From: Leucoraja ocellata
Lineage: Eukaryota
Direction of reading: 5' to 3'
NCBI GenBank assembly: GCA_036785375.1
Contig: JAWMAR010000563.1
Coordinates: forward strand, 930,001-994,000
Length of the DNA stretch: 64,000 nucleotides
Part shown: in pieces, positions 10,150-35,471 of the stretch
Numbering within the stretch: the stretch's first letter is position 1
How the letters are laid out: each line of letters opens with the position of its first letter
Notes under the pieces: generated by a model
The model's database searches: none
What the model saw: the letters and a program-made list of their open reading frames with translations, nothing else
Told to the model about the DNA's origin: nothing
Position numbers and translations under genes: made by a program

Positions 10150-10458
10150 CGTCACTGCCCCACCTCTCTCTCCCGCTTCACACTTTCGCTTTCATGAGCT
10201 CGCCTGTCGCGCTCCACCCCGGCAACCGGTGTCGCGGCGCCAGCTGTGCTGCTGATTGGACAGACTGGGCTATTTATCACCAGCTTCACGGGGCTCTTCT
10301 GCCCGGATACCGGTGACTCACGGGCGGGCAGGACTGTGATTGGCCGTGGGCACGGCGCCGACCAATCAGCGCGGGGTGCGGGCGTGAAACGGGCGGGCAA
10401 GCGGTGCAGAGTGAATCGCGCATGCGCCCAGGACTAGCAAACTCACCACAACCTGGAC
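10150..10458 (+). promoter_or_regulatory. MHC class I-type promoter: ISRE + two X1-X2-Y modules + CCAAT + GC box
   Basis: ISRE actttcgctttc 10182-93; X1/X2 cccggcaaccgg-tgtcgcg 10218-36 with Y ctgattgg 10252-59; X1/X2 cccggataccgg-tgactca 10302-20 with Y gtgattgg 10336-43; ccaatcag 10362-69; CpG-rich. Confidence 0.75.
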
Positions 10459-10570
10459 CAAAGATTACAGAGGAGCAAGATAGACCACTCCTCGAAAAAC
10501 GCGTAGTATGATGTGTGTGATTGTCGACGCCATTTTTTGAGGCATTTTATTGAGCTTACCCCACACTGTC

Positions 10571-11785
10571 ATGGCGTCCTTATCTAAATCTTCACATCAC
10601 TGCTCTGCTATCAAGTATTCTAATCGTAAATCTAAATGACCCGACCTGTCATTCTTTAGGTTCCCCAATAAAAAAGAAAGGTGAGAAAATATTATTATTA
10701 TTTTCAGTCGATATTCTGTCGTGAAAATGTTATTTTCTGTTCTCCCATGAACAGCCATTGGGAAACTAGGTTTGTCGGTACATTAGAAAGTTATTAGACT
10801 TATTTTTAATAGAACTTTACTTACCATAATAATAAAGACAATTTTAACACTTCTGTACATTTTTGGTTTTGTTCTTGTAAGGGATTGGTCTCCACAATAT
10901 GGCCCGCGGGACACATCAGGTCCAGTGACCATGGGATTTTTCGAGCTCAGATTCGTGTCCGAGAATGCGGCGGCTGTTACCCATTATGTCCCTCGAATTG
11001 TCGAGACATCACAAGCAAAGATCACAAGCCCGCCGTGAAGAAGGGTGCAATCAAATATTATACAACTCTGCTCTATCATCTTTGGGTGCAATGGTGGGTC
11101 GGGGGGTTAGGCGGCGGCGGCCGCAATCAAAGATACGAGAGGAGCTCTGCTCTATAATCTTTGGTCGGAATGGGACGGCTGCGCGTTATAATGTGGTATC
11201 GTTCCACTCCCTCTCCCCCTTCTTCCTCTCCCTGTCCCCCTTCTCCCTCTCCCCCCTTCTCCCTCTCCCCCCTTTTCCCCTTCTCCCTCTCCCCTTCTCC
11301 CTCTCCCCCATCTCCCTCTCCCCCTTCTCCCTCTCTTCTCTCTCCCCTCTCTTTCGATCTCTCTCTCCCCTCTTTTCTCTCGATCTCTCTCTCTCCCTCT
11401 CTTCTCTCGATCTCTCTCTCTCTTCTCTCGATCTCCCTCCCTTCCCTCTCTCCCTCCCTTACCTCTTCGTGAGAGTTGGCAGCTCTGCTATGCCTTGGGT
11501 CCAAAAGAGGATAGAAAGAAAATACTTAATGGTCTTTAAGGTAAATTGACATATTAGAGGCAAAAAGCATCTTCAACATACAGATCTCCACACAACTGAA
11601 AACAATTGCATTTAAGTGATATATCATCCATTGTTCAGGCATGTAGTTATGATCATCTTTTTTCTTATTAGTTAATCCTAAATGATATCTCCTGTAATTT
11701 CAGATGTCAACAGTGGGTCCAGAATACTCGTCGACAAGATCTCCTGCACCGAACTGCAGAGTATTTGTCAAATAACTGCCGTCTT
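10571..11785 (+). pseudogene. Two-exon THAP zinc-finger remnant of the transposase (10571-10680 + 11704-11785)
   Basis: MASLSKSSHHCSAIKYSNRKSK*PDLSFFRFPNKKE|RCQQWVQNTRRQDLLHRTAEYLSNNCRL; GT-AG phase-2 intron; stop at 10637, second Cys codon reads TAT; similarity ends before the catalytic domain. Confidence 0.85.
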
Positions 11786-11895
11786 ATGTACATTGTGTGA
11801 AATTGTGATTTGTTAACTGCACAAAACTAATGCAAATGGCGATATATTTATTATTGTATCTACGTTGGACATTTTGCTCTTTGGTGTCAGAACGC

Positions 11896-12038
11896 GGGGT
11901 GGGAGATTGCAACCTTCACGTGGTCCACCCTGTTTCGACAAATGCAATCAACCCGGTGTGCACAGTCAAATAAGATCAAATAGAACAAGTTGTCCTACAA
12001 CTTTAGGCTGTGCACGCCATACGCAATAAGAAGAAGAA
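11896..12038 (+). mobile_element. 143-bp 5'-truncated retroposon with (aag)n tail
   Basis: 12-bp TSD gtgtcagaacgc at 11884-95 and 12039-50. Confidence 0.8.
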
Positions 12039-13339
12039 GTGTCAGAACGCAGTCTGAAGAAGGCTTCCGACCTACAACATCACCTATTCCTTTTCTCCAG
12101 AGATGCTGCCTGACCCACGGAGTTACTCCAGCATTTTGTGTCTATCTCTGTTTAGATTGGACTCGTGTGTGGAGATTGCGGCTGGTCTGGTGATCTAGAA
12201 CGAGGGCCAAAGTCTCAGAATATGGGTCATGATATTTAGTAATGAGACAAGGAGCAGTTTCTTCACTCAAGGGCTGGGAATCTTGGAATTCTTTATCGCG
12301 TGAGATGGTGGAAGTCGAGCCCTTGAAAGGAGAGATTTTTTTTTTCAAATACAAAAAGGATGAAGGATAATGGAGAGAATGTGGGAATAAGGTGTTGAGT
12401 TGCAGGATCAACAGTAATATTACTGATGGTGGTGTGAACTTAGATGGCTTATCCTTGCTTCTATTTCTTACAGAGACACAGCACGGAAACAGGCCCTTTG
12501 GCCAACCGCATCCGCATTGACCAGCAATCCCCGCACACTAACACCATCCTACACACACTAGGGACAATTTACACTTATACCAAGCCTACAAACCTGTATG
12601 TCTTTGGAGTGTGGGAGGAAACCGAAGATCTCGGAGAACACCCATTCAGTCATGGGGGAATGTACGAACTCAGTACAGACAGCACCCACTGTAAGGCAGC
12701 AACTTTACTGCTGCACCACCATGCCGCCCTTAATCCACTAGGGCACTAGGTTACAATAAACTTCCTACATATTCCAGGAATGCATCTCATAAAAATGGGA
12801 GAGATTTAAATGCAGTGTAAAATCTGCTCTCAGTTTCCTAGATCGATATTGCTCTAATGGCCTCTTTGTATCATTTTCTTTGATTTAAACCATCCATTGT
12901 TCTGCATTTAGATTTTATTTTTCCCCTGTGGATCACAAGGCACTGTTTGTTTCAGGGGTGACTCTAATCTCCAGCGTAATTTGACAAGACAGCCAAGAGG
13001 GCAAACACAGGCAGTTCAGAGCTGCTGCCTGTATCGCATGAGAGAACAAGAATGAGACCAACTTGTTTTTTGCAGATCATCAACCCTTGACTGATGTTAT
13101 CAATGCCGATGGTGACTCAAGGAGACTCAACCAGGTGGTGGTTTACAAAGGTCCATGCCCATTGTTCCTCATGGCATACCACCAGCCTCAACAGATCACC
13201 TAGTCATAGAGTCTCACAGCGTAGAAGCAGGCCCTTCAGCTCAACTTGTCCACGCTGGCCAACATGTCCCATCTACACTAGTCCCACATGCCTGCATTTG
13301 GCCCATACCCCTCTAAACCTGTCCTAACCATCAAATAAC

Positions 13340-13945
13340 CTAACAGAACTGTCATATGAGGAAAGATTTAAAAGACTAGGCTTGTATTCACTGGAGTTTA
13401 GAAGGATGAGGGGGAATCTTATCACATTGTTTACAGTGTACTATGTTTACAGATTCTGTTGTGCTGCTGAAAGTAAGAATTTAATTGTTCTATCTGGGAC
13501 AAGCTAGATGCAGGAAATTGTTCTACATGACAATAAAACACTCTTGTTAGATACAAGGGGATCTTATAGAAACGTCTAAATGAATAAAAGGACTGAACAA
13601 GCTAGATACAGGAAAAATGTTCCCAATGTTGGGCGAGTCCAGAACCAGGGGCCACAGTCTTAGAACAAAGGGGAGGCCATTTAAGACTGAGGTGAGAAAA
13701 AACGTTTTCACCCAGAGAGTTGTGAATTTGTGGAATTCCCTGCCACAGCGGGCAGTGGAGGCCAAATCACTGGGTGGATTTAAGAGACAGTTAGATAGAT
13801 CTCTAGGGGCTAGTGGAATCAAGGGATATGGGGAGAAGGCAGGCATGGGTTATCGATTGGGGCTGATCAGCCATGATCACAATGAATGGCGGTGCTGGCT
13901 CGAAGGGCCAAACGGCTTCCTCCTGCACCTATTTTCTATATTTCT
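13340..13945 (+). mobile_element. CR1 3' fragments nested in the THAP element
   Basis: ORF 13617: FPMLGESRTRGHSL...FTQRVVNLWNSLP; CR1 3' UTR. Confidence 0.9.
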
Positions 13946-16249
13946 AGAACACTCATCCAGTAATCCTCGAGCCCACCAGCTCATCCCGTAGTCAATTCAT
14001 CAGCTTTTCCATAAGAACTTCCATCAGTTCTTCCAAAAGAATGACAATCGGACAATCTCGATTACCCTCAGCCCATCAAGCAGCCCCTTAATTCGCACAG
14101 AAGTCTGAACTATTGAATGCTCACTGCATCTCTTTCCATGTCAGCAAGTTAATATCCAGCTGCATGAACCATGTGAAAAAGGAATAAATAGATGCATGTG
14201 GTGCAGTGATTTGTGCAGCACTATAGGTCTGGAGACCAAGAGGAGTTCACCATTGAACGGAGTTTGAACGGGGGGGCTTGAGGCCCCCGACCGAGGAAGA
14301 ACAAAAGGAAGGGACTTGAACTTTATTTCGCCTTCCATCATAGTGAGGAATGTGTAGGAGTCACTTTGGTGAATGTCCGTATTAAAATGTGTTTGTGAGT
14401 GCTGTTGCTTTTAATTGTATGACTGACCTGGCCAATGAAATTCCTCGTATGTTGCAAAACATGCTTGGCAAATAAAATCTGATTATGATTCTGAAAAGCC
14501 TTTCCCATACTCTTTCCTCTCTTTGATCTTTTTGCAGTTGACTGCCTTTCTGTACTTGTTGCAAGAGATTGTTGTGGCATCCAGCATCCTCGGAGAATGT
14601 AGAATTAAAGGCAGAGGCAATAAGATGGTTATTTGCCTCAAGATTGGGTTATTGTATCTCCAGAGGCTCTGGGAGACACAAGGTTCAAGAGGGAACACAA
14701 AAAGCCTAATTAGGAAGAATATTAAGAGTAAGATTTTCAATTAAAATACTGTAATTGATGGAACCTTGCCTTTAAATTGGTTCTTGGATGAAACCCTGAT
14801 GGTTCTCACATTATCTCTTTAAATTTACTCTCCTTTTCACACTTGCATTAAAACACACAGCCACCGCCATTCACAGTGATACTGCCCGGCACTCATAATT
14901 ACAGTCAACACAGCCACCTTGACAGCCACACAAAATGATGTAAATAAAAATTGTTTTCCTTGTTTAAGAAGTTCAATTTAGAATTATTTGAAATTGTGGG
15001 GTTTGGTACAAAATACTGCTGACCCACAAATGTGTTGCTATGCGACATTCACATTTAAAAAATCCATGTCTCAAAAAAAGCAAGAAGATGCCCATGTTAT
15101 TTGACCAACATCAGATGAATTTAAATATGTAGGTATGTATTCATTAGTTTTGCTCTTAATTCCCTTTTCCAAATCATTAATATATATGGTAAACAGTTGC
15201 GGCCCCAACACCAAGCCTTGCGGCAAAAAAATCCAGATGTTTAGTCAAACATGATTTCCCTTTCATAAATCCATGTTGACTTGGACTAATTATTTTACTG
15301 CTATCCAAATGCCCCATTATTACATCTTTTATAATTGACTCTAGCATCTTTCACACCACCAAAGTCGGGCTAACTGGTCTGTAATTCCCCGTTTTCTCTC
15401 ACGCTCCTTTCTTGAAAAGTGGGATAGCATTAGCTATCCTCCAATTCACAGGAACTGATCGTAAATCTATTGATCGTTGGNNNNNNNNNNNNNNNNNNNN
15501 NNNNNNNNNNNNNNNNNNNNNNNNNNNNNNNNNNNNNNNNNNNNNNNNNNNNNNNNNNNNNNNNNNNNNNNNNNNNNNNNNNNNNNNNNNNNNNNNNNNN
15601 NNNNNNNNNNNNNNNNNNNNNNNNNNTATGTGTGCATATTTATGTGTATACGTATGTATGTATGTATGTGTATATATGTGTGTGTGTATATATGTATGTG
15701 TATATATATGTATGTGTATAAATATATATATATGCAGATATTTATTATTACTATATAATTATATATATAATTGCCTTTATGGTTCATGCACATCATCTTA
15801 CAAGACAAATGAATTCCTGTAGTGATTATTTAAATCAGTTGCTTCTGATCCATGAGAATAAACTTTATTATCTCTAACTTGCCTCTCACACACAGACACA
15901 CATTCATATAAATATGTAAAATATATATACGTAAAATTTAATTTTGTGCAGTGTGTGTTAAAGCAATACAAGGGAAACTGTACAATACAATGCAAGGGAA
16001 ACTACGCAAAGGAGGGGGCTGTTCCCGCTACAAGATACTCGAGGATCTTTGCTTTGGATCAAAGATTATAGCGGAGCTCTATAATCTTTGCTTTGGATCA
16101 CAGCGGGTGGCATACCGGAAGTCACGTGTCGCATTAAAAAATGGCGGCCGTGACGTTCCGTCACGTACTACACGCCAGTCCATTGGATTTCGGAGGAGTG
16201 GTCTATCTTGCTCCTCTAGGATCTTTGACCTGGACAGTCGGGGGCGACC

Positions 16250-16317
16250 ATGCTCTGCCCGCTGCTGCCGCTGTTGCTGCTGCACGCCCTCCCTCCTGGC
16301 TCGAGCCCACGCTGCAG
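16250..16317 (+). pseudogene. MHC class I leader (signal peptide) exon with a +1 frameshift
   Basis: gcgaccATG, Leu-rich stretch, donor cag|gtgggt; deleting one C in gccctccctcctgg gives MLCPLLPLLLLHALLLARAHAA-G in phase 1, matching the alpha1 acceptor. Confidence 0.65.
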
Positions 16318-16361
16318 GTGGGTGACGGGCACTGATGGGCTGCCAACCCAGTCCCGGACAG

Positions 16362-21565: not shown

Positions 21566-24500
21566 AGAAACATAGAAACATAGAAACATAGAAATTAGGT
21601 GCAGGAGTAGGCCATTCGGCCCTTCGAGCCTGCACCGCCATTCAATATGATCATGGCTGATCATCCAACTCAGTATCCCGTACCTGCCTTCTCTCCATAC
21701 CCCCTGATCCCCTTAGCCACAAAGGCCACATCTAACTCCCTCTTAAATATAGCCAATGAACTGTGGCCTCAACTACCCTCTGTGGCAGAGTTCCAGAGAT
21801 TCACCACTCTCTGTGTGAAAAAAGTTCTTCTCATCTCGGTTTTAAAGGATTTCCCCTTTATCCTTAAGCTGTGACCCCTTGTCCTGGACTTCCCTAACAT
21901 CGGGAACAATCTTCCTGCATCTAGCCTGTCCAACCCCTTAAGAATTTTGTAAGTTTCTATAAGATCCCCTCTCAATCTTCTAAATTCTAGAGAGTATAAA
22001 CCAAGTCTATCCAGTCTTTCTTCATAAGACAGTCCTGACATCCCAGGAATCAGTCTGGTGAACCGTCTCTGCACTCCCTCTATGGCAGTAATGTCCTTCC
22101 TCAGATTTGGAGACCAAAACTGTACGCAATACTCTAGGTGTGGTCTCACCAAGACCCTGTACAACTGCAGTAGAACCTCTCTGCTCCTATACTCAAATCC
22201 TTTTGCAATGAAAGCTAACATACCATTCGCTTTCTTTACTGCCTGCTGCACCTGCATGCCTACCTTCAATGACTGGTGTACCATGACACCCAGGTCTCGC
22301 TGCATCTCCCCCTTTCCCAATCGGCCACCATTTAGATAATAGTCTGCTTTCCTGTTTTTGCCACCAAAATGGATAACCTCACATTTATCCACATTATACT
22401 GCATCTGCCAAACATTTGCCCACTCACCCAGCCTATCCAAGTCACCCTGCAGTCTCCTAGCATCCTCCTCACAGCTAACACTGCCCCCCAGCTTAGTGTC
22501 ATCCGCAAACTTGGAGATATTGCCTTCAATTCCCTCATCCAGATCATTAATATATATTGTAAATAGCTGGGGTCCCAGTACTGAGCCTTGGGGTACCCCA
22601 CTAGTCACTGTCTGCCATTGTGAAAAGGACCCATTTACTCCTACTCTTTGCTTCCTGTTTGCCAGCCAGTTCTCTATCCACATCAATACTGAACCCCCAA
22701 TGCCTTGTGCTTTAAGTTTGTATACTAATCTCTTATGTGGGACCTTGTCGAAAGCCTTCTGGAAGTCCAGATACGCCACATCCACTGGTTCTCCCCTATC
22801 CACGCTACTAGTTACATCCTCGAAAAATTCTATAAGATTCGTCAGACATGATTTACCTTTCGTAAATCCATGCTGACTTTGTCCAATGATTTCACCACTT
22901 TCCAAATGTGCTGCTATCCCATCTTTAATAACTGACTCTAGCAGTTTCCCCACTACCGATGTTAGACTAACTGGTCTGTAATTCCCCATTTTCTCTGTCC
23001 CTCCCTTCTTAAAAAGTGGGGTTACGTTTGCTACCCGCCAATCTTCAGGAACTACTCCAGAATCTAAAGAGTTTTGAAAGATTATTACTAATGCATCCAC
23101 TATTTCTGGAGCTACTTCCTTAAGTACTCTGGGATGCAGCCTATCTGGCCCTGGGGATTTATCGGCCTTTAATCCATTCAATTTACCCAACACCACTTCC
23201 CGGCTAACCTGGATTTCACTCAATTCCTCCAACTCCTTTGACCCGCGGTCCCCTGCTATTTCCGGCAAATTATTTATGTCTTCCTTAGTGAAGATGGACC
23301 AAAGTAGTTATTCAATTGGTCCGCCATATCCTTGTTCCCCATGATCAACTCCCCTGTTTCTGACTGCAAGGGACCTACATTTGTTTTAACTAATCTCTTT
23401 CTTTTCACATATCTATAAAAACTTTTGCAGTCAGTTTTTATGTTCCCTGCCAATTTTCTTTCATAATCTATTTTTCCTTTCCTAATTAAGCCCTTTGTCC
23501 TCCTCTGCTGGTCTTTGAATTTCTCCCAGTCCTCCGGTATGCTGCTTTTTCTGGCTAATTTGTACGCATCATCCTTCGCTTTGATACTATCCCTGATTTC
23601 CCTTGTTATCCATGGATGTACTACCTTCCCTGATTTATTCTTTTGCCAAACTGGGATGAACAATTTTTGTAGTTCATCCATGCAGTCTTTAAATGTCTTC
23701 CATTGCATATCCACCGTCAACCCTTTTAGAATTAATTGCCAGTCAATCTTGGCCAATTCACGTCTCATACCCTCAAAGTTACCTTTCTTTAAGTTCAGAA
23801 CCATTGTTTCTGAATTAACAATGTCACTCTCCATCCTAATGAAGAACTCAACCATATTATGGTCACTCTTGCCCAAGGGGGCATGTACAACAAGATTGCT
23901 AACTAACCCTTCCTCATTACTCAATACCCAGTCTAAAATAGCCTGCTCTCTCGTTGGTTCCTCTACATGTTGATTTAGATAACTATCCCGCATACATTCC
24001 AAGAAATCCTCTTCCTCAGCACCCCTGCCAATTTGATTCACCCAATCTATATGTAGATTGAAGTCACCCATTATAACCGTTTTGCCTTTGTCGCACGCAT
24101 TTCTAATTTCCTGTTTGATACCATCCCCAACTTCACTACTACTGTTAGGTGGCCTGTACACAACACCCACCAGCGTTTTCTGCCCCTTAGTGTTGTGCAG
24201 CTCTACCCATACCGATTCCACATCCTCCAAACTAATGTCCTTCCTTTCCATTGCATTAATCCCCTCTCTAATCAGTGACGCTACCCCACCTCCTTTTCCT
24301 TTCTGTCTATCCCTCCTGAATATTGAATATCCCTGGATGTTCAGCTCCCAGCCTTGGTCACCCTGGAGCCATGTCTCCGTGATCCCAACTATATCATAGT
24401 CATTAATAGCTATCTGCACATTCAACTCATCCACCTTATTACGAATGCTCCTTGCATTGAGACACAAAGCCTTCAGGCTTGTTTTTACAACACTCTTACC

Positions 24501-25794
24501 CCTTACACAATTATGTTGAAAAGTGGCCCTTTTTGATTTTTGCCCTGGTTTTGTCTGCCTGCCACTTTTACTTTTCACCTTGCTACCTATTTCTTCTACC
24601 CTCATTTTACACCCTTCGGTCTCTACGCTCACACATTTAAGAAACCCTTTCCCTTTAACTCCATCCTCCACTGTCCCATTCAACACCCCACCCCCCTTAT
24701 TCAGTTTAAAGCCACCCGTGTAGCAGTGGCAAACCTGCCTGCCAGAATGCTGGTCCCACACCTGTTAAGATGCAACCCGTCCCTTTTGTACAGTTCCCCC
24801 TTACCCCAAAACAGATCCTAGTGATCTAAGAATCTAAATCCGTGCCCCGTGCACCAGATCCTCAGCCACACGTTCAGGTCCCGTATCTCCCTGTTGCTGC
24901 TCTCGCCAGCACGGGGAACTGGAAGCAAACCGGAGATAACAACCCTGGAGGTCCTGCTTTTCAACATTTTTCTGAGCTCTCTAAAGTCACGCTGCAGAAT
25001 ATTCATCCCCTTCTTTCCGACATCGTTTGTGCCGACATGCACTACCACTTCCGGATGTTCACCTTCGCCCTTGAGGATTTTCTGCACTCTGTCCGTGACA
25101 TCCTGGATCCTGGCACCGGGAAGGCAGCACACCATCCTCGCATCCCGTCTGTTGCCGCAGAAACCCCTGTCCGTACCTCTCACGATGGAGTCTCCCACTA
25201 CAATGGCCTTGCCTGCCTTAGGCCTTTTTGGTTTTGGCTCAACAGCCCTATTCGCGTCACAGGCCAGTCCGCCGCTCACGTCTTCTGTCCCAACAGCTTC
25301 TAAGCGGATGAACCTGTTTACAAGAGGTACATCACCCGGGGACGTTGGCATTCCATGCTTCCCTCCCTTTCTCACTGTCTCCCACCTTCTCTCTTCCAGT
25401 ACCTTAGGTGTAACAATCGTACTGTAGGACTTGTCGAGGAACGACTCCGTTTCTCGTACGAACCGGAGGTCATCCACTTGCTTCTCCAGTTCCCCAACAC
25501 GGCCCTTCAGGAGCTCTACCTGGATGCATTTTTCGCATTTGTAGCAGCCAGAGGCACCAGCGGTGTCCTTGACCTCCCACATACTGCAAGCATCGCACTG
25601 AATCAGCTTGCCTGACATCTCCTTCTTTCGTCTCCCTCTCAAGCGTATTGCGTGGTCTCCTCTCCGAAGACTCTCGAGCCAAAGACTCACACTTTTCTCA
25701 CAGGGCACTTCCCTCACTAGGCCGCTCACTCACTGCCGCTCGCAAAGAGCTGTCCTGCTTAAATTGACTGATAAATTGCCTGATTTACCAATTT
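21566..25794 (-). mobile_element. Near full-length young CR1 LINE nested in the DIRS
   Basis: ORF1 24818..25729 (CxxC zinc finger, GDSIVRG/HVGTND esterase); ORF2 23274..24761 + 21769..23268 (APE + RT FADD); (tttctatg)n tail; TSD agggt at 21561-65 and 25795-99. Confidence 0.97.
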
Positions 25795-28199: not shown

Positions 28200-30334
28200 T
28201 TTATACCTGAAGCTTACAAGGTTTATGATTTGATTTAATAATATTATTTATCATTTACGTTTAAAAATTGGTATGAATGTATTTCTTGAATATCAGTAAC
28301 AATTTCTCCCAAACTACCAAGGCAGTTGTGAAGCATGGACTCGCTCCACGGCATGAGGTCACAGAGCTTTGAAATCTTCACGAAGTCGCTCACGTGACTC
28401 CGAAGTAAAATAGTAAGATTAAACGAGAACTTACCAGTTTGAAGTTTGATCTTTATTTTATGAGGAGGAACGTTGAGGGAATACGTGCCCTCCGCTCCCA
28501 CCCTCATATGGTCATATCTGAAACTGGTATTTCTTTAATAATCTTACTATGTTTTTACTTACTTTGAAGGATGACATGCATGCGTCGTAAGTGGGGTTCT
28601 TCACGTATTCCCTCAACGTTCCTTCTCATAAAATAAAGATCAAACTTCAAACTGGTAAGTTCTCGTTTAATCTTACTATTCTCTGCCACAGAAGGCAGTG
28701 GAGGTCAATTCACTGGATGTATTCAAGAGAGAGTTAGATTTAGCTTTTAGGAATTAAGGGATCAAGGGATATGGGGAAAAAGCAGGAACGGGGTATTGAT
28801 TTTAGATGATCAGCCATGATTATATTGAATGATGGTGCTTGCTTGAATGGCCGAATGGCCTACTGTTGAACCTATTTTTCTATGTTTTCTATGTTTCTAG
28901 GACTGTTTGATGTAAATAATAAAAAGGCAGGCACAGCTTTGGCCCACGCGAGTGCTCATGGCTACCCCTTTAACTTGGAGAAAATTAGAGGTGAATAGAG
29001 AAGTGTAGAGGGGAGGACAGGTTTGACCCGGCCTCTGGCAGCTCGGTCCAAACACCCATCACCCTTGGAGTGAAAAACGTACCCCCAAGATGTTATTAAA
29101 TTTTGCCCCTCCCACCTTAAAACTGTGCTCTCTGGTTCTTGATTCTCCGCGCCTGGATAATCACTAGACAATTGACAATAGGTGCAGGAGTAGGCCATTC
29201 GGCCCTTCGGGCCAGCACCGCCATTCAATGTGATCATGGCTGATCATCCCCAATCTGTACCCCGTTCCTGCCTTCTCCCCATATCCCCTGACTCCGCTAT
29301 TTTTAAGAGCCCGATCTAGCTCTCTCTTGAAAGCATCTAGAGAACCTGCCTCCACCGTTTCGGAAGCAGAGAATTCCACAGACTCACAACTCTCTGTGAG
29401 AAAAAGTGTTTCCTCGTCTCCGTTCTAAATGGCTTACTCCTTCTTCTTAAACTGTGGCCCCTAGTTCTGGACTACCCTAAAATCAGGAACATGTTTCCTG
29501 CCTCTGGCATTTCCAAACCCTTAACAATCTAATATGTTTCAATGAGATCCCCTCATGATTTTATACACCTCCATATGCTCAAGCCTCTATGAAGTGGATA
29601 CTCACAGTCTTTTACCAGTGTTGAGTCTCACGTTTGACTACACTGTTTAAAATACATTTGGACAGGTACATGGGTGGGAAACATAAGGACATGCAGATGC
29701 TGCTTTACAAAAGGTCAGTGATAGGTGGATACATGGTGGGGGGGGGGGGGAGGTTGATGGGGTAGATGTTCAAGGGCAGAGATGAACAGGCAAAATGTGT
29801 CACACAATGACAGAATAGTTGTACTGTGTCCTTACCCCCGAGACCCAGTGCTGGGCACAGCTCAGTGCGGGCACGTTAATGGGTGAGGCATGGCCATGCA
29901 GGAGGCTTGGCGAGGTGTGGAAGTTGGGCGGACAGTGGGAGGGCAGGAGATGGCCAGAGTACACAATATCTGCCTCCACAACCACCCCTGGCAATGCGTT
30001 CCAGGCCCCCAACTACTCTGTGTAAATAAACCTTTCCCTTTACATCGTGGCTTAAAACTATACCCTCTACTTTGGGTCATTTTGCAGGTTAATTGGCCTT
30101 TATAAAATAATCCTGGTGTGTGGGAAGTGGATTTGAAAGTGGGATAACATGAACAAGTGTGAATGGGTGATCGATGGTCAGCATGGACTCGGTGGGCTGA
30201 AGGGCCTGTTTCCATGCTGTATCTCCAAAGCAAACTCAGTTAAATCACCGTGGATCTCGTGCATCTTAATCTTCTGGACCAGCTACCATGGGGGACTTGA
30301 TCACATGCCTTACAATCACCACACACACAACGGG

Positions 30335-33199
30335 GAATGTTGGGGGGTTTTTGTGGGCGGGGGTGGAGAGATTGTGGGTGGGGTGGGTGTGGGGCTGTGT
30401 GTGTGGGGAGCTGGGGTATGTGTGGTGTGGGTTACTGGTGTGTAAGCGGGATGTGTTTGGGGTTCTGTGTGCGTGTGTGTATTTGTGGGGTGTGTGTGTG
30501 TGTGGCGTGTGTGTGCAAGATGTGTGGGGTGTGTGTGGGTGTGTGTGGGGGTGTTGGGTGTATTAGTGTGTGTGGGTGTGTGTGTTTATGTGTGTGTGTG
30601 TGAGAGAGATTATGGGGGGGGGGAATCTGTGTGTCCCGCTGTCTCTGACTCTGTGCCCGGTTCCAGGCTTCCACTCGCTGCGTGGGTGTGTGTGTATGTG
30701 TGTGTAGGTGTGTGTAGGTGTGTGTGGATATGTGTGTGTAGGTGTGTGAGGGTGTGGTGTGTGTGTGTGTGAGAGGGTGTGAGTGTGTTTATGTTTAGGG
30801 TGTGTGGGGGGTGTGAGTGTGTGTATGTGTGTGTGTGTGTGGGGGGGGCTGTGCGAGTGTGGATGTGGGTGTGTTTGTGTGAGAGTTTGTGTTTGTGTGT
30901 GTGTAGGCGTGTGTGTGGGTGGGTGTGTGCATGGGTGTATGCATGTGTGTGTGTGTGTGTGTATGTGGGGTGTGTGTATTTGGGGTGTGTGAGTGCGGTG
31001 CAAGTGTGTGAGTGTGTATATGTGTGTGGGGGGGGGATGTGGGTGTGTGTAGGTGTGCGTGAGTGTGGTTTGTGTGTGTGTGGGGTGCGTGCGTGGGTTT
31101 GTGTGAGTGTGTGTGGGTAAGTGTGTGGGTGGTTATGTGTGGGTGTGTGTATGGTTGTGTTAAAATGAGTTCTTTTTGCCAGTCTAATTCAAGAAAACTT
31201 GATTCAAACCATTGCTGCTAAAATCGACTCTTTATTCTGACAGCGCTGGATAATTCTTTAAACCTTCCAACACAGAGTTCGAAACTCGGGGGCAGGTTGA
31301 AAGAACTACTGACTTTGGCATAAATGTAACACATTATATAGGTAAAAGACAAGTATAGTACAATAGGAATAGCAAACTATTAACCAATCATTATGGTTTA
31401 CCATACATTTCACTTATTTGCATTAACCAATCAACTAAATCCTAATGCTCAGTCTGAAGAAGGGTTTCGGCCCGAAACGTTGCCTATTTCCTTCGCTCCA
31501 TAGATGCTGCTGCACCCGCTGAGTTTCTCCAGCTTTTCTGTATAACTAAATCCTTTCCATTGATTGACAACACGTATAGTCACATGATTTTCCCTTTTCC
31601 AGCCCCTTTACAACCTTCATCCCCTCTGGTTTCTTCAACCTCTTTGCTCAAAATCATTTTATTTCATTAAAGTAAAACCACAGATATAAAACTAATTCTC
31701 ACAGAATACTTTTCAGAATATACACATAATATAGCAATCACACAACACATACATACAAAACATATTTTCACTTTTGGAAAAGAAAGTTATTTCTAAAACT
31801 TCCGATTTAAACAAAGTCTAATACTTACAATCGTAATTAAACACAATACACTTCACAATTAATTCCCTTACAACCACTTAGTTAAAATACAGTTACTTAT
31901 GGATTACAAAGATTAAAGATGAGTTTCGCCCCATTCTTACAAAGTGGTAAAGACAAAGTTCTAATCACACAATTCCCAACTACAGCCACATAAAGGCACT
32001 TGATTGCTTCTTCCCAAGCTCGGGTCTAATTTCATTTTGTATTACAACCTCCCCCTACTATCTCTGGAGAAAAGGAATGTAACATTTCCTCGCCACTAAA
32101 AGCATTCCGCACAACAAATGAAAGAGTATCAAAACAGAGTTATTTTCTCAGTTTCTGGTAACCATAAGAAATCCTTTTGCAAAGGTCACACAACCATCAT
32201 CTATGCCTTATCTTTTATCCCAACATAAACACATCTAAACAGCACAAACCATCTCACAGACTAGTATCTACCCTTGGTGCCTACAATCCAACATAGGCAA
32301 CCATAAATTGCCTTAGATGACACAGCCAAACTCTGAGATGTGTCACAAAGGAAGAAGGATGGTGCCCATGTCATGGAGAAAGATCCCATTAACAACCTCT
32401 ATTATAAACACCAACCTAAACCAACTACACCTTCTCACAGCATGATTATTGCTCCAAAGCAATAAAGAAAGATATGCCTATCCAGGTCACCCCTTCCATG
32501 TTTATGATAAGCCATCTGTTCTCCTGTGTGTGTTCTTTGTTCTTTATTTCTTTGTGGAGGCATGTATTTCTGAAAGCCCCAACTCCAAACCCTTCTCTTG
32601 CAACTTAACACAAGTTCCTTAAGAACTTATCATTTGAGCAATCTTATTATATATTTCCTCAGTTGTGCGTGTGGGGGTATGTGTTTGTGGGTGTGTGTGT
32701 GTGTGGGTGAGTGGGTGTGTGTCTAGTTGTGTGTGGTTGGTTGTGTGTGTGTGTGGGTGTATGTGGGTGTGTGTATTTGAGTGTGGGTGCGTGTTTGTGT
32801 GTGTGTGCATGGTGTGTGTGGGGTGTGTGGGTGGGGGGTTTGTGTGTATGGTGTGTGTGTGGGGGTGTGTGTCTGTGGTCTGTTGTCGATGGGTGTGTGC
32901 ATGAGTGCACCGGTGTGTGGGTGTGTTTGTGTGGGTGGGTGTGCGGGTGTGTGGGTGTTTGTGTGGATGTGTGTGGCAGTGTGTGTGGATATGTGTGTGA
33001 GGGTGTGGTGTGCGTGGGTGGGTGAGTGTGGAGTGTGTGTTTATGTGTGGGGTGTGTGTGTGGGGGGGTGTGAGTGTGTTTATGTTTAGTGTGTGTGTAG
33101 GTGTGTGAGGGTGTGGTGTGTGGGTGGGTGTGTGTATGTGTGGGGTGTGTGTGTGTGGGAGGGGTGTGAGTGTGTTTATGTTTAGGGTGTGTGTGGGGG

Positions 33200-33240
<41 letters not shown>

Positions 33241-35471
33241 GGGGGGGGGGCTATGCGAGTGTGTGGAGTGTGTGGGTGTGTTTGTGTGGGAGTTTGTGTT
33301 TGGGTGTGTAGGCGTGTGTGTGGGTGGGTCTGTGTGTAGGTGTATGCATGTGTGGGTGTGTGTGTATGTGGGGTGTGTGAGTGTGGGGTGGGAGTGTGGG
33401 GGGGGTGGGTGTGTGTCGGTGTGCGTGAGTGTGGTTTGTGTGCGTGTGGGTGTGTGTGGGGTGTGCGTGGGTGTGGGTTTGTGTGAGTGTGTGGGTATGT
33501 GTGTGGGTGGTTATGTGTGGGTGTGTGTATGGTTGTGTGTGTGGGAGTATGTGTTTGTGGGGGTGTGTGTGTGGGTGGGTGCGTGTGGGGCGTGTGTGTC
33601 CAGTTGTGTGTGGTTGGTTGTGTATGTGTGTGTGTGGGTGTGTGTATGTGGGTGTGTGTATTAGTGTGTGGGTGCGTGTTTGTGTGTGTGTGCGTGGGGT
33701 GTGTGGGTGGGGGGTTTGTGTGTGTGTGGTGTGTGTGTGTGGGTGTGTGTCTGTGGTCTGTGTTGTAGATGGGTGTGTGTGCATGAGTGCGCGGGTGTGT
33801 GGGTGTGTTTGTGTGGATGTCTGTGGGTGGGTGTGCGGGTGTGTGGGTATGTGTGTGGGTGTGTGTGTGTGTGGGGGGATGGGTGTGTACATGGGTGTGT
33901 GTAGGTGTGCATGACTGCAGTGTGTGCGTGTGGAGTATGTGTGGGTTGTGTGTGTGGGGTGTGTGTGTTTGGGTGTGTGCCTGTGTGTGGAGTGCGTGGG
34001 TGTGTGTGCTGTGTGTGGGTGGTTATGTGGGTGTGTGTATGGTTGTGTGTGTGGGAGTATGTGTTTGTGGGGGTGTGTGTGTGGGTGGGTGTGTGTGGAT
34101 GCGTGTGGCGTGTGTGTTTGTGGTTGTGTGTGGTTGGTTGTGTATGTGGGTGTATGTTTTTGTGTGAGTGTGTGGGTCTGAGTGTGGGTGTGTGTATTTG
34201 AGTGTGGGTGCCTGTTTGTGTGTGTATGATGTGTGGGGGGTTTGTGTGTGTGGTGGGTGTGTGGGGGTGTTTGTGTGAATGTGTGTGGGTGTGTATGTGT
34301 GTGCATTGTGTGTGTTTGTGTGTTTAGGATGTGAGTGTGTCTGTGTCGTGTGTGTATGTGGGGTGTGTGAGTGTGGGATGCGTATGTGTAGGAGTATGCC
34401 TGTACGTGTGTGTGTGTGGGGGTGTGTGGGTGTGGGTATGTGTGTGGGTGTGATGTGTGTGTGTAGGTGTGCGTGAGTGTGTGGTGTGTGTGTGTGGGGT
34501 GTGTGCGTGTGTGTAGGTCTGTGNNNNNNNNNNNNNNNNNNNNNNNNNNNNNNNNNNNNNNNNNNNNNNNNNNNNNNNNNNNNNNNNNNNNNNNNNNNNN
34601 NNNNNNNNNNNNNNNNNNNNNNNNNNNNNNNNNNNNNNNNNNNNNNNNNNNNNNNNNNNNNNNNNNNNNNNNNNNNNNNNNGTGTGTGCGTGTGGTTGTT
34701 TGTGTGGCGGTGTGTGTGCGTGTGTGTGTAGGGGGGTATGGGGTGCGTGCGTGGGGGGGTGTGTGTGTGAGTCTGTGGGTGTGTGTATGGGGGTGTGTGT
34801 GAGTGTGTAGGTGTGTGGTGTGTGTGTATGTGGGTGTTTGTGAGTGTGTAGGTGTGTGTGAGTGGTGTGTGTATGTGGGGTGTGGGAGTGTCGGGTGCGT
34901 GTGTGTGGGTGTGTGTGGGGGTGTGTGTCTGTGGTCTGTTGTGGCGGTGTGGGTGTTTGTAGGTGTGCGTGAGAGTGGTGTGTGTGGGGTGTGGGTGTGT
35001 GCGTAAGTGTGGGTTTGTGTGTGGTGTGTGTGTGGGGAGTTTGTGGGTGGTTATGAGTAGGTGTGTGTATGGTTGTGTGTGCGGGTGTATGTGTGGGTGT
35101 GAGTGTGTGGGGTGTGTGTCTGGTTGTGTGTGGATGTATGTGTGTGTGTGTGTGTGTTTGGTTGTGTGTATGTTAGTGTGGTTTGTGTGTGGGTGAGCGT
35201 GGTGTGTTTGTGTGGAAGTGTGTGGTGGTGTGTGTGTGTGTTTGTGTGCGTGGGTGTTGGTGTGNNNNNNNNNNNNNNNNNNNNNNNNNNNNNNNNNNNN
35301 NNNNNNNNNNNNNNNNNNNNNNNNNNNNNNNNNNNNNNNNNNNNNNNNNNNNNNNNNNNNNNNNNNNNNNNNNNNNNNNNNNNNNNNNNNNNNNNNNNNN
35401 NNNNNNNNNNNNNNNNNNNNNNNNNNNNNNNNNNNNNNNNNNNNNNNNNNNNNNNNNNNNNNNNNNNNNNN
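30335..35471. repeat. (GT)-rich low-complexity block in MHC intron 1, interrupted by an LTR remnant and two N gaps
   Basis: Composition; gaps at 34524-34681 and 35265-35471. Confidence 0.95.
31158..32660 (-). mobile_element. LTR retroelement 3' remnant: LTR 31158-31612 plus polypurine tract and adjacent internal sequence
   Basis: TG...CA ends (tgttaaa / tttaca), minus-strand PPT agaggggatgaaggt abutting 31612, TATA (~31335) and AATAAA (~31232) in the correct order. Confidence 0.65.

What the first reader, a model, noticed from the sequence alone, without database searches (positions are those of the whole stretch)
10451..16235. Hidden 5.8-kb THAP-bearing, P-element-like DNA transposon
Seen: 35-bp CA...TG TIRs, an exact 8-bp TSD (acctggac) and a spliced THAP remnant that the ORF track misses (split by an intron and a stop). 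Established: THAP + 8-bp TSD fits P-superfamily transposases; vertebrate P relatives are mainly known as domesticated THAP9 and zebrafish Pdre elements. Caveat: the THAP resembles the THAP12 type, which is hAT-derived. Inference: an internally deleted member of a possibly undescribed chondrichthyan P family.
Basis: partly seen in the sequence, partly recalled or inferred. Interest (0 to 1): 0.85.

Follow-up and report, generated by a model that had tools for sequence, protein, structure and literature searches.

The report
Dead P-element copy in a skate
This is a broken, non-autonomous copy of a P-element-type DNA transposon sitting just upstream of a gene's start codon in what is probably a skate genome. 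It is an ordinary relic in itself, but it belongs to a multi-copy family of a transposon type rarely described in vertebrates.

Summary
40-nt inverted ends (35 of 40 paired) at 10459-10498 and 16188-16227 are flanked by an exact 8-bp duplication, ACCTGGAC. Two exons (10571-10680 and 11704-11785), separated by a GT-AG intron, encode the first 70 residues of a THAP domain. This copy has a private stop codon and has lost one zinc cysteine.

Pfam does not see THAP in either exon alone. An exhaustive phmmer search with exon 2 found 8 relatives, all with Pfam THAP. The closest are from the skates Leucoraja erinacea and Amblyraja radiata (85-89% identical to the exons).

Those relatives run on into the P-transposase HTH domain. 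They overlap a 674-aa protein with the P-type RNase H and GTP-binding insertion domains, which matches Drosophila P transposase (E 3e-43) with D230, D303 and E531 conserved. None of 14 relatives has a hAT domain, so P is favoured over hAT.

This copy keeps no transposase sequence beyond the THAP remnant and is filled with LINE and other repeat pieces. An assembly gap lies in that filler, so the length is only an estimate.

Contigs from three DNA runs show tens of other copies, most without the stop. Three 31-36-bp stubs made of TIR tips, flanked by 8-bp repeats, fit P-type excision scars.

I could not show that full-length copies carry these same ends, and could not check Dfam or Repbase. The scan had already noted similar elements elsewhere in this genome.

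The parts
10451..10458 (.). Left copy of the 8-bp target-site duplication, ACCTGGAC
   Evidence: Read; identical to 16228-16235.
10459..10498 (+). Left terminal inverted repeat, 40 nt, starts CAAAG
   Evidence: pair I1 (88% complementary). Nearly all other copies read T, not C, at 10468 (table 3: 41, 41 and 46 contigs).
10528..10543 (+). Left subterminal inverted repeat, partner of 16131-16146
   Evidence: pair I15: 16 nt, 88% complementary, 70-85 nt from the left end.
10571..10680 (+). THAP exon 1 (residues 1-42 plus two bases of codon 43). Broken by stop TGA at 10637-10639, and has Tyr (10616-10618) where relatives have the second zinc cysteine
   Evidence: tblastn: 28 of 33 identical to P0002 residues 11-43, E 4e-11. 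In other copies 10637 reads C (CGA, Arg; 28, 54 and 69 contigs) and 10617 reads G (TGT, Cys; 9, 20 and 65 contigs) (table 3).
10681..11703 (+). Intron inside the THAP domain, GTGAG...tttcag, 1023 nt. It holds stubs A and B and a CT-rich simple repeat
   Evidence: Sequence. The two tblastn matches abut at P0002 residue 43. P0006 residues 54-105 align to 11540-11785, so intron-like sequence is shared with Leucoraja erinacea copies.
11044..11092 (.). Stub A: 33-bp palindrome-like TIR-tip pair (11052-11084) between two exact GGTGCAAT repeats
   Evidence: An X2 contig from another copy covers 10946-11107 (record 10).
11120..11171 (.). Stub B: 36-bp TIR-tip pair (11128-11163) between GCCGCAAT and GTCGGAAT (6 of 8). 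A and B with their flanks look like one old tandem duplication
   Evidence: family D11 (11066-11109 against 11145-11188, 75%).
11204..11464 (.). CT-rich simple repeat within the intron
   Evidence: families D3 and D5; read laying skipped it as a repeat.
11704..11785 (+). THAP exon 2 (residues 43-70). The frame runs on to a stop at 11798-11800 without homology
   Evidence: phmmer: 8 hits with E<=0.001, best 4e-8. tblastn: 25 of 28 identical to P0002 residues 43-70, E 5e-11.
11786..11954 (+). Possible decayed, frameshifted rest of the THAP domain (weak evidence)
   Evidence: 11868-11954 against P0019 residues 72-100, 8 of 29 identical, E 0.18 in a 300-nt database. Not significant.
12040..15480 (.). 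Filler: pieces of very abundant repeats (about 12040-12147, 12440-12745, 13158-13946), a LINE reverse-transcriptase fragment on the minus strand (15074-15350), and low-copy stretches of unknown origin
   Evidence: RVT_1: E 4e-5 for 15074-15244, E 0.13 for 15180-15350. depth table and loose ends at 12076, 12147, 12585, 12644, 13864 and 13946. The 13328-13988 translation resembles the tail of the window's own LINE ORF at 21769-23268.
15481..15626 (.). Assembly gap (N), length estimated
   Evidence: no reads laid across it. Not filled.
16038..16051 (.). Internal copy of the right TIR tip, directly followed by the left repeat of stub C. It is the inverted counterpart of 11008-11023
   Evidence: family D9 and pair I19.
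16052..16098 (.). Stub C: 31-bp TIR-tip pair (16060-16090) between two exact CTTTGGAT repeats
   Evidence: The site is covered by many contigs of other copies (row 16072).
16131..16146 (-). Right subterminal inverted repeat, partner of 10528-10543
   Evidence: pair I15.
16188..16227 (-). Right terminal inverted repeat, ends CTTTG
   Evidence: pair I1.
16228..16235 (.). Right copy of the 8-bp target-site duplication, ACCTGGAC
   Evidence: Read.

Best explanation
This is a dead, non-autonomous copy of a P-superfamily cut-and-paste DNA transposon.

Shown: it has 40-nt inverted ends, a second subterminal inverted pair, and an exact 8-bp target duplication. Its 5' end keeps the first two exons (residues 1-70) of the element's THAP DNA-binding domain.

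Shown through relatives: that THAP type heads a transposase built as THAP, linker, P-type HTH, then an RNase H fold interrupted by a GTP-binding insertion domain. The DDE triad is intact.

Inferred: the copy was moved in trans by such a transposase. In the Drosophila model the enzyme binds subterminal sites through THAP, pairs the ends, cuts with a long stagger, and inserts with an 8-bp stagger. Here it landed between a promoter-like CCAAT-rich region and the first ATG exon of a host gene.

Afterwards it gained a stop codon and a Cys-to-Tyr change, and was filled with LINE and other repeat pieces. It cannot move itself, because no transposase coding sequence beyond the THAP remnant is left.

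The three TIR-tip stubs inside it are best read as scars of same-family elements that inserted and later excised. These were already present in the master copy of this subfamily.
For: TIRs and duplication.

THAP exons: phmmer of exon 2 against 1,835,955,588 representatives gave 8 proteins with E<=0.001. All 8 hit Pfam THAP. tblastn gave 85% and 89% identity to P0002 across the two exons, meeting at residue 43.

P-type link:
- PF12017 is above its 23-bit cut-off in P0005 (24.8), P0020 (25.4), P0021 (25.5) and P0023 (30.3). P0019 scores 22.7, just below.
- P0023 also has PF21787 (E 4.6e-40), PF21788 (6e-17) and PF21789 (4e-9).
- P0019 overlaps P0023 over 102 aa at 73.5% identity. P0005 overlaps it over 68 aa at 86.8%. 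P0002 overlaps it over 36 aa at 86%.
- P0023 matches Drosophila P transposase 6P5A at E 3.4e-43. D230, D303, E531 and the D(2)H motif are aligned to identical residues. PMC8230255 names these residues (passages read).
- 0 of 14 relatives list a hAT family.

Family is multi-copy: 41-69 distinct contigs per run cover TIR and exon-1 sites with a shared other letter. Most restore Arg at the stop, and a subset restore the Cys.

Stubs: every arm matches the TIR only up to position 13-18 of 40. The exact pattern occurs twice in the window, both inside the element, against 0 in 100 shuffles. Drosophila P transposase cuts 17 nt inside the TIR (PMC7776569, passages read).

Insertion near a promoter fits the stated P preference (same paper).
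Against: - The link from these ends to a P transposase therefore goes only through the THAP exons.
- P0023 comes from a Logan contig of an unnamed organism.
- Pfam does not detect THAP in either exon alone.
- The tip CAAAG also fits the hAT tip pattern YARNG, and 8 bp is also the hAT duplication size (both recalled).
- The stubs lie inside the family's shared sequence (record 10 and rows 11109 and 16072), and A and B are one duplicated event. They could be native subterminal motifs rather than scars.
- Several internal stretches (12173-12369, 12961-13157, 14537-14930) are low-copy and unexplained.
- The intron is not confirmed by RNA. The joint 10680 to 11704 is not among the 15 joints listed, and 3,557 were not shown.
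Confidence: 0.8

Rival explanations
1. It is a hAT-superfamily element whose transposase carried a THAP domain, as in the ancestor of THAP12/PRKRIR.
For: An 8-bp duplication and a CAAAG tip are compatible with hAT (recalled patterns). All three independent 8-bp repeats have A at position 7. NCBI's pipeline names several relatives '52 kDa repressor of the inhibitor of the protein kinase-like', that is, THAP12-like.
Against: 0 of 14 relatives show a hAT family in Pfam. Five show the P-transposase HTH domain: four above the cut-off and one just below. One carries the whole P-type catalytic core. TIR-tip stubs with 13-18-nt arms are not what hAT hairpin-type excision leaves (recalled).
Confidence: 0.05
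2. The TIR family and the THAP exons are unrelated in origin. Either a MITE-like element captured a fragment of a THAP gene or of another transposon, or it is mobilised by a transposase other than the P-type one found here.
For: The TIR-to-transposase link is indirect. Only THAP residues 1-70 are in the copy. Relatives include THAP-only or chimeric gene models (P0001/P0009, and P0002 with B-box and TRIM coiled coil).
Against: Similar numbers of contigs cover the TIR site (41-46) and the exon-1 sites (28-69) in the same runs, so the exon belongs to the repeated unit. The exon sits 112 nt from the end, in the orientation expected for a transposase gene. P0006 (L. erinacea, three accessions on three contigs) starts in sequence matching 10508-10570, upstream of the ATG.
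Confidence: 0.1
3. It is not one element. Two solo ends of different copies were brought together by a mis-join at the assembly gap.
For: Continuity across 15481-15626 is unverified. Depth was 0 there and no contig spans it.
Against: The flanks are identical 8-bp repeats (a chance of 1 in 65,536 for unrelated ends). The two ends are in inverted orientation. The outer flanks read as one gene's 5' region: a CCAAT-rich promoter-like stretch, then an ATG exon.
Confidence: 0.03

Closest known systems
Drosophila melanogaster P element and its transposase (PDB 6P5A)
   Same: 8-bp target duplication, terminal plus subterminal inverted repeats, and an N-terminal THAP. The family's inferred transposase (P0023) aligns over 429 residues at E 3.4e-43, with D230, D303, E531 and D(2)H conserved and the GTP-binding insertion domain present. 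The stub arms of 13-18 nt fit the 17-nt staggered cut.
   Different: The TIR is 40 nt and unrelated in sequence. There is an intron inside the THAP domain. The host is a vertebrate. This copy encodes no enzyme.
Zebrafish Pdre2 / zfTHAP9
   Same: A vertebrate P-type element with TIRs, subterminal inverted repeats, an 8-bp duplication and many internally deleted copies (bioRxiv 10.1101/2024.03.22.586318, passages read).
   Different: Pdre2 has 13-bp TIRs and 12-bp subterminal repeats of different sequence. I made no protein comparison with zfTHAP9, because no tool returned its sequence.
Human THAP9 (domesticated P transposase)
   Same: The same Pfam domain set as P0023. The families are named TNP-like / THAP9-like.
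   Different: THAP9 is a single-copy host gene without TIRs (recalled). Here there is a multi-copy family with ends and duplications.
THAP12/PRKRIR and THAP-bearing hAT (Tip100-like) transposons
   Same: Resemblance at THAP-domain level is strong enough that NCBI names relatives after it. The duplication is also 8 bp.
   Different: No hAT dimerisation or DUF4371 domain appears in any of 14 relatives. That THAP12 is hAT-derived is recalled, not tested here; the THAP review I searched has no occurrence of 'hAT'.
Galileo / 1360 (long-TIR, foldback-like P-superfamily elements of Drosophila)
   Same: P-superfamily elements with repeat-rich ends. This may be relevant to earlier notes of long-TIR and foldback THAP-bearing copies in this genome (s1-885148, s1-885694). 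Recalled, not tested.
   Different: This copy has short (40-nt) TIRs. Alignment of the two ends finds nothing longer.

Membership tests
P superfamily of DNA transposons | 8-bp target-site duplication | tested here: met
   ACCTGGAC on both sides, 8 of 8. Stubs A and C also have exact 8-bp repeats.
P superfamily of DNA transposons | Terminal inverted repeats, with additional subterminal inverted repeats | tested here: met
   40-nt TIRs at 88%, and a 16-nt subterminal pair at 88% (pairs I1 and I15).
P superfamily of DNA transposons | Transposase with an N-terminal THAP domain | tested here: met
   A remnant of residues 1-70 is 85-89% identical to proteins that hit Pfam THAP at E 1e-16 to 1e-18. 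It is not detected by Pfam on single exons. The joined exon model was deliberately not searched.
P superfamily of DNA transposons | Transposase core: P-type HTH plus an RNase H fold split by a GTP-binding insertion domain, with a DDE triad | tested here: inconclusive
   Absent from this copy. Present in P0023, which overlaps the THAP-bearing relatives at 73-87% identity.
P superfamily of DNA transposons | Long (17-nt) staggered cut at the ends, leaving TIR tips at the donor site | tested here: inconclusive
   Three stubs have arms that match the TIR only to position 13-18. This is compatible, but they may be native motifs. It needs a genome-wide series and empty/filled site pairs.
hAT superfamily | Transposase with a hAT C-terminal dimerisation domain (and usually a BED finger, or DUF4371/DUF659) | tested here: not met
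   0 of 14 relatives (P0001-P0008, P0018-P0023) list any hAT family (E<=0.01, E<=0.001).
hAT superfamily | 8-bp duplication and a YARNG terminal motif (recalled definition) | tested here: met
   ACCTGGAC and tip CAAAG. This does not discriminate against P.

The most novel reading that the evidence does not exclude
Skate genomes carry a young, perhaps still mobile, P-element family. Its fossil excision scars (TIR-tip stubs with arms of at most about 17 nt between 8-bp repeats) would show that the unusual 17-nt staggered cut of Drosophila P transposase is conserved in vertebrate P elements.

The same family may also have been exchanged horizontally among marine animals. A Priapulus caudatus protein is 72% identical over 281 aa to the Amblyraja radiata one. 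That is closer than the Leucoraja erinacea protein is to the Amblyraja one (67% over 246 aa). Hagfish, sea-urchin and octopus relatives exist as well.
Probability: 0.3. Interest if true: 0.75.

Novelty: new member of a known kind. Interest (0 to 1): 0.5.

Why it matters
Mobile P elements in vertebrates are described in print mainly for zebrafish (Pdre); elsewhere the family is known as the domesticated THAP9 gene.

A multi-copy P family in skates has three consequences:
- It extends the record of mobile P elements to cartilaginous fish.
- Its relatives are currently annotated under misleading names (THAP1-, THAP2- and THAP5-like, '52 kDa repressor...-like', TRIM55-like). Recognising the family would correct that annotation.
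- If the stubs are excision scars, it offers a natural archive of P-type cleavage geometry outside insects.

This particular copy is a dead relic. Its local interest is that it separates a promoter-like region from the first coding exon of a host gene by about 5.8 kb.

Tried and rejected
What led nowhere:
- Pfam on each THAP exon piece and on eight other ORF pieces found no THAP. It found only RVT_1 on two minus-strand pieces, at E 4e-5 and E 0.13.
- The PDB sequence search with each exon piece found nothing relevant.
- The search for homologous proteins with the 42-aa exon-2 piece found no candidate.
- The same search with the 114-aa ORF 10813-11154 found one candidate, which did not score.
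- The ESM Atlas with exon 2 gave no usable hit.
- The search of earlier findings by sequence was blank.
- A metagenome scan for the 21-nt TIR core gave 0 matches.
- The search for related loci with P0023 in metagenomes matched 36 pattern stretches, none confirmed.
- blastn of the flanks and of the element ends against the window found no paralogous empty site and no second copy.
- tblastn of all 23 fetched proteins found no transposase remnant anywhere in the window beyond the two exons. The best P0023 match had E 0.71.
- The weak matches at 11868-11954 and 11990-12022 (E 0.05-0.18 in a 300-nt database) are not significant, and I do not rely on them.

Limits of the read data:
- Read laying was swamped by the nested abundant repeats. 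Only 15 of 3,572 joints and 24 of 9,247 loose ends were shown.
- It could therefore test neither the intron joint, nor an empty site, nor continuity over the gap.
- The depths are sums over contigs, not copy numbers.

Considered and rejected: a long-TIR or foldback structure for this copy. The ends align for only 40 nt.

Papers:
- I read passages of 10.1101/2024.03.22.586318, PMC7776569, PMC8230255, PMC13631171 and PMC4350176 through 'find'.
- The rest I saw only as search listings.
- Searches found no paper describing a chondrichthyan P element.
TE libraries in the supplements of skate or shark genome papers could already hold this family.

Full report
**Observation**

The stretch is bounded by inverted repeats at 10459-10498 and 16188-16227. 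They are 40 nt long and 35 of 40 positions pair (pair I1).

The 21-nt core of the repeat occurs exactly twice in the 64-kb window, once on each strand. None of 100 shuffles gave any match.

Directly outside both ends lies ACCTGGAC, at 10451-10458 and 16228-16235, 8 of 8 identical. A second inverted pair of 16 nt lies 70-97 nt inside each end (pair I15).

**The assembly gap**

The N run at 15481-15626 lies between a LINE reverse-transcriptase fragment on the minus strand and a TG/TA simple repeat. No frame of the element crosses it. It touches none of the diagnostic parts.

Continuity over the gap is not shown. Read laying had zero depth in that bin and no spanning contig. The length of about 5.8 kb is therefore an estimate.

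That the two ends are one insertion rests on their inverted orientation and the identical 8-bp flanks.

**The THAP remnant**

Reading from the ATG at 10571, the frame has a stop at 10637-10639 and reaches a GTGAG donor at 10681. After a tttcag acceptor ending at 11703 it continues from 11704.

Searched exon by exon, neither Pfam nor the PDB sequence set recognises a THAP domain.

The decisive step was an exhaustive phmmer search of exon 2 alone (31 aa) against 1.84 billion representatives. It gave 8 proteins at E<=0.001, best 4e-8, at 58-89% identity. All 8 hit Pfam THAP.

tblastn of these proteins back onto the window gave two matches. Exon 1 is 28 of 33 identical to P0002 residues 11-43. Exon 2 is 25 of 28 identical to residues 43-70. 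Both have E about 5e-11 and they meet at the same residue, which fixes the intron position.

Against the relatives, this copy has a stop where they have Arg. It has Tyr where they have the second zinc cysteine.

**Which superfamily**

The sources name the closest relatives as follows:
- XP_055522325 'TRIM55-like' and XP_055488319 'THAP2-like' from Leucoraja erinacea.
- XP_032889417 '52 kDa repressor of the inhibitor of the protein kinase-like' and XP_032888325 'THAP1-like' from Amblyraja radiata.
- Further proteins from Myxine glutinosa, Priapulus caudatus, Diadema, Octopus and Babylonia.

Beyond THAP, P0005, P0020 and P0021 pass the Pfam cut-off for the P-transposase HTH domain, and P0019 misses it by 0.3 bits.

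A search with P0002 residues 1-252 found P0023. This 674-aa protein has the HTH domain, the TNP-like RNase H N-terminal domain (E 4.6e-40), the GTP-binding insertion domain (6e-17) and the RNase H C-terminal domain (4e-9).

P0023 overlaps the THAP-bearing proteins as follows:

| Protein | Overlap with P0023 | Identity |
|---|---|---|
| P0019 | 102 aa | 73.5% |
| P0005 | 68 aa | 86.8% |
| P0002 | 36 aa | 86% |

P0023 aligns to Drosophila P transposase (6P5A) at E 3.4e-43. Identical residues sit at D230, D303 and E531, and the D(2)H motif is conserved. The residue roles are from PMC8230255 (passages read).

No hAT family appears in any of the 14 relatives scanned. The THAP exons of this element therefore belong to a P-type transposase lineage.

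**What this copy is**

tblastn with all 23 fetched proteins finds nothing else of the transposase in the element or the window. Only the first 70 codons survive in recognisable form. A frameshifted continuation to about 11954 is possible but not significant.

The interior is mostly foreign:
- very abundant repeat pieces;
- a LINE 3' end on the plus strand;
- a reverse-transcriptase fragment on the minus strand;
- simple repeats;
- a few low-copy stretches that I cannot explain.

The copy is non-autonomous and dead.

**Family evidence from reads**

Contigs of three DNA runs, coded as organisms A, B and C, laid at 80% likeness or better, show tens of distinct contigs over the element's own parts (table 3).

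| Window position | Letter here | Letter in other copies | Effect | Contigs with the other letter (X1, X2, X4) |
|---|---|---|---|---|
| 10468 | C | T | TIR position 10 | 41, 41, 46 |
| 10637 | T | C | stop becomes Arg | 28, 54, 69 |
| 10617 | A | G | Tyr becomes Cys | 9, 20, 65 |

So the stop is private to this copy, and the lost cysteine is private to a subset of copies. The THAP exon is part of the repeated unit.

Summed depths are not copy numbers. The RNA run gave only a few reads over the element. The intron joint was not among the 15 joints shown, so splicing is untested.

**The stubs**

Three short palindrome-like units are built only from TIR tips.

| Stub | Coordinates | Length | Flanking 8-bp repeats |
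|---|---|---|---|
| A | 11052-11084 | 33 bp | GGTGCAAT on both sides |
| B | 11128-11163 | 36 bp | GCCGCAAT and GTCGGAAT |
| C | 16060-16090 | 31 bp | CTTTGGAT on both sides |

The exact tip-gap-tip pattern occurs twice in the window, both times inside the element, against none in 100 shuffles.

Every arm matches the TIR only to position 13-18, although the TIR is 40 nt long. Drosophila P transposase cuts the non-transferred strand 17 nt inside the TIR, so the donor flanks keep 17 nt of each tip (PMC7776569, passages read). End-joining of such flanks would give exactly this kind of structure between the retained duplications.

There are cautions:
- A and B with their flanks are one old tandem duplication (family D11).
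- Contigs of other copies cover the A region and the C site. The stubs therefore predate the spread of this subfamily.
- TIR-tip-like motifs also occur as an inverted pair at 11008-11023 and 16044-16059 (pair I19).
- They could therefore be native subterminal motifs.

Earlier first-reader notes list similar stubs on other pieces of this genome. Those notes are unchecked leads.

**Context**

The insertion lies about 60-90 bp downstream of a CCAAT-rich, CpG-rich promoter-like stretch. It ends 14 bp upstream of an ATG that opens a signal-peptide-like exon ending in a GT donor. This fits the reported P preference for promoter regions, as a single anecdote.

**Known or new**

The kind is known: a P-superfamily transposon, with zebrafish Pdre2 as the vertebrate precedent (13-bp TIRs, 8-bp duplication).

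Four searches of the paper library found no description of a chondrichthyan P element. Dfam, Repbase and paper supplements could not be consulted. I rate it a new member of a known kind.

The scan had already noted THAP-bearing P-like elements and stubs elsewhere in this genome.

**Verdict**

The main gap is the missing direct proof that full-length copies with these ends encode the P-type enzyme.

Interest is 0.5. The copy itself is ordinary debris. The family, its possible excision scars and its cross-phylum relatives deserve follow-up.

Noticed in passing
window 10182-10450 and 16236-16320: The element sits between a CpG-rich stretch with several CCAAT/ATTGG boxes and an ATG at 16250. The ATG opens a leucine-rich, signal-peptide-like exon ending at a GT donor near 16317. 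The insertion therefore separates a likely promoter from the first coding exon by about 5.8 kb.
   Followed up: no
P0005 (Priapulus caudatus XP_014671368) against P0019 (Amblyraja radiata XP_032888325): They are 72% identical over 281 aa, including the non-domain linker. That is higher than the 67% over 246 aa between the two skate proteins P0002 and P0019. Hagfish, Diadema and Octopus relatives also exist. This suggests horizontal transfer among marine animals, or contamination.
   Followed up: partly
P0002/P0018 (Leucoraja erinacea XP_055522325, LOC129716485): These gene models fuse the P-element THAP, linker and start of the HTH (residues 1-252) to a B-box and TRIM coiled coil. This is either an exonised transposon 5' end in a TRIM gene or an annotation chimera.
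   Followed up: no
P0001/P0009 (Amblyraja radiata XP_032889417 and a Logan contig of 1029 bp): These are short proteins (161-180 aa) with a THAP domain and little else, of the same THAP type. One is an uninterrupted ORF on a short contig. They could be THAP-only products of truncated elements or a domesticated gene.
   Followed up: no
window 12173-12369, 12961-13157, 14537-14930: These internal stretches have far lower summed depth than the rest of the element in runs X1 and X2. They have no protein-family hit and no explanation. They may be rare internal sequence of the family or old decayed repeats.
   Followed up: no
window 16340 to about 17900: A long minisatellite of 16-18-bp units (GTGGGTGAGGGTCAGTGT-like) starts right after the first exon (families D1, D2 and D6). 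Similar GT-rich arrays lie at about 30300-34300, next to two further assembly gaps (34524-34681 and 35265-35471).
   Followed up: no
window 21769-24761, minus strand: Two adjacent long ORFs of 499 and 495 aa read as one near-intact LINE, with a reverse-transcriptase part and an upstream part. The 3' tail of the 499-aa ORF resembles the nested piece at 13328-13988. Not scanned against Pfam.
   Followed up: no
window 11990-12022: A second, very weak THAP-like match (6 of 11 identical to the end of exon 2 in relatives, E about 0.1 in a 300-nt database) lies about 200 nt downstream of exon 2. This is probably chance. I mention it because earlier notes describe copies with duplicated THAP exons.
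   Followed up: partly
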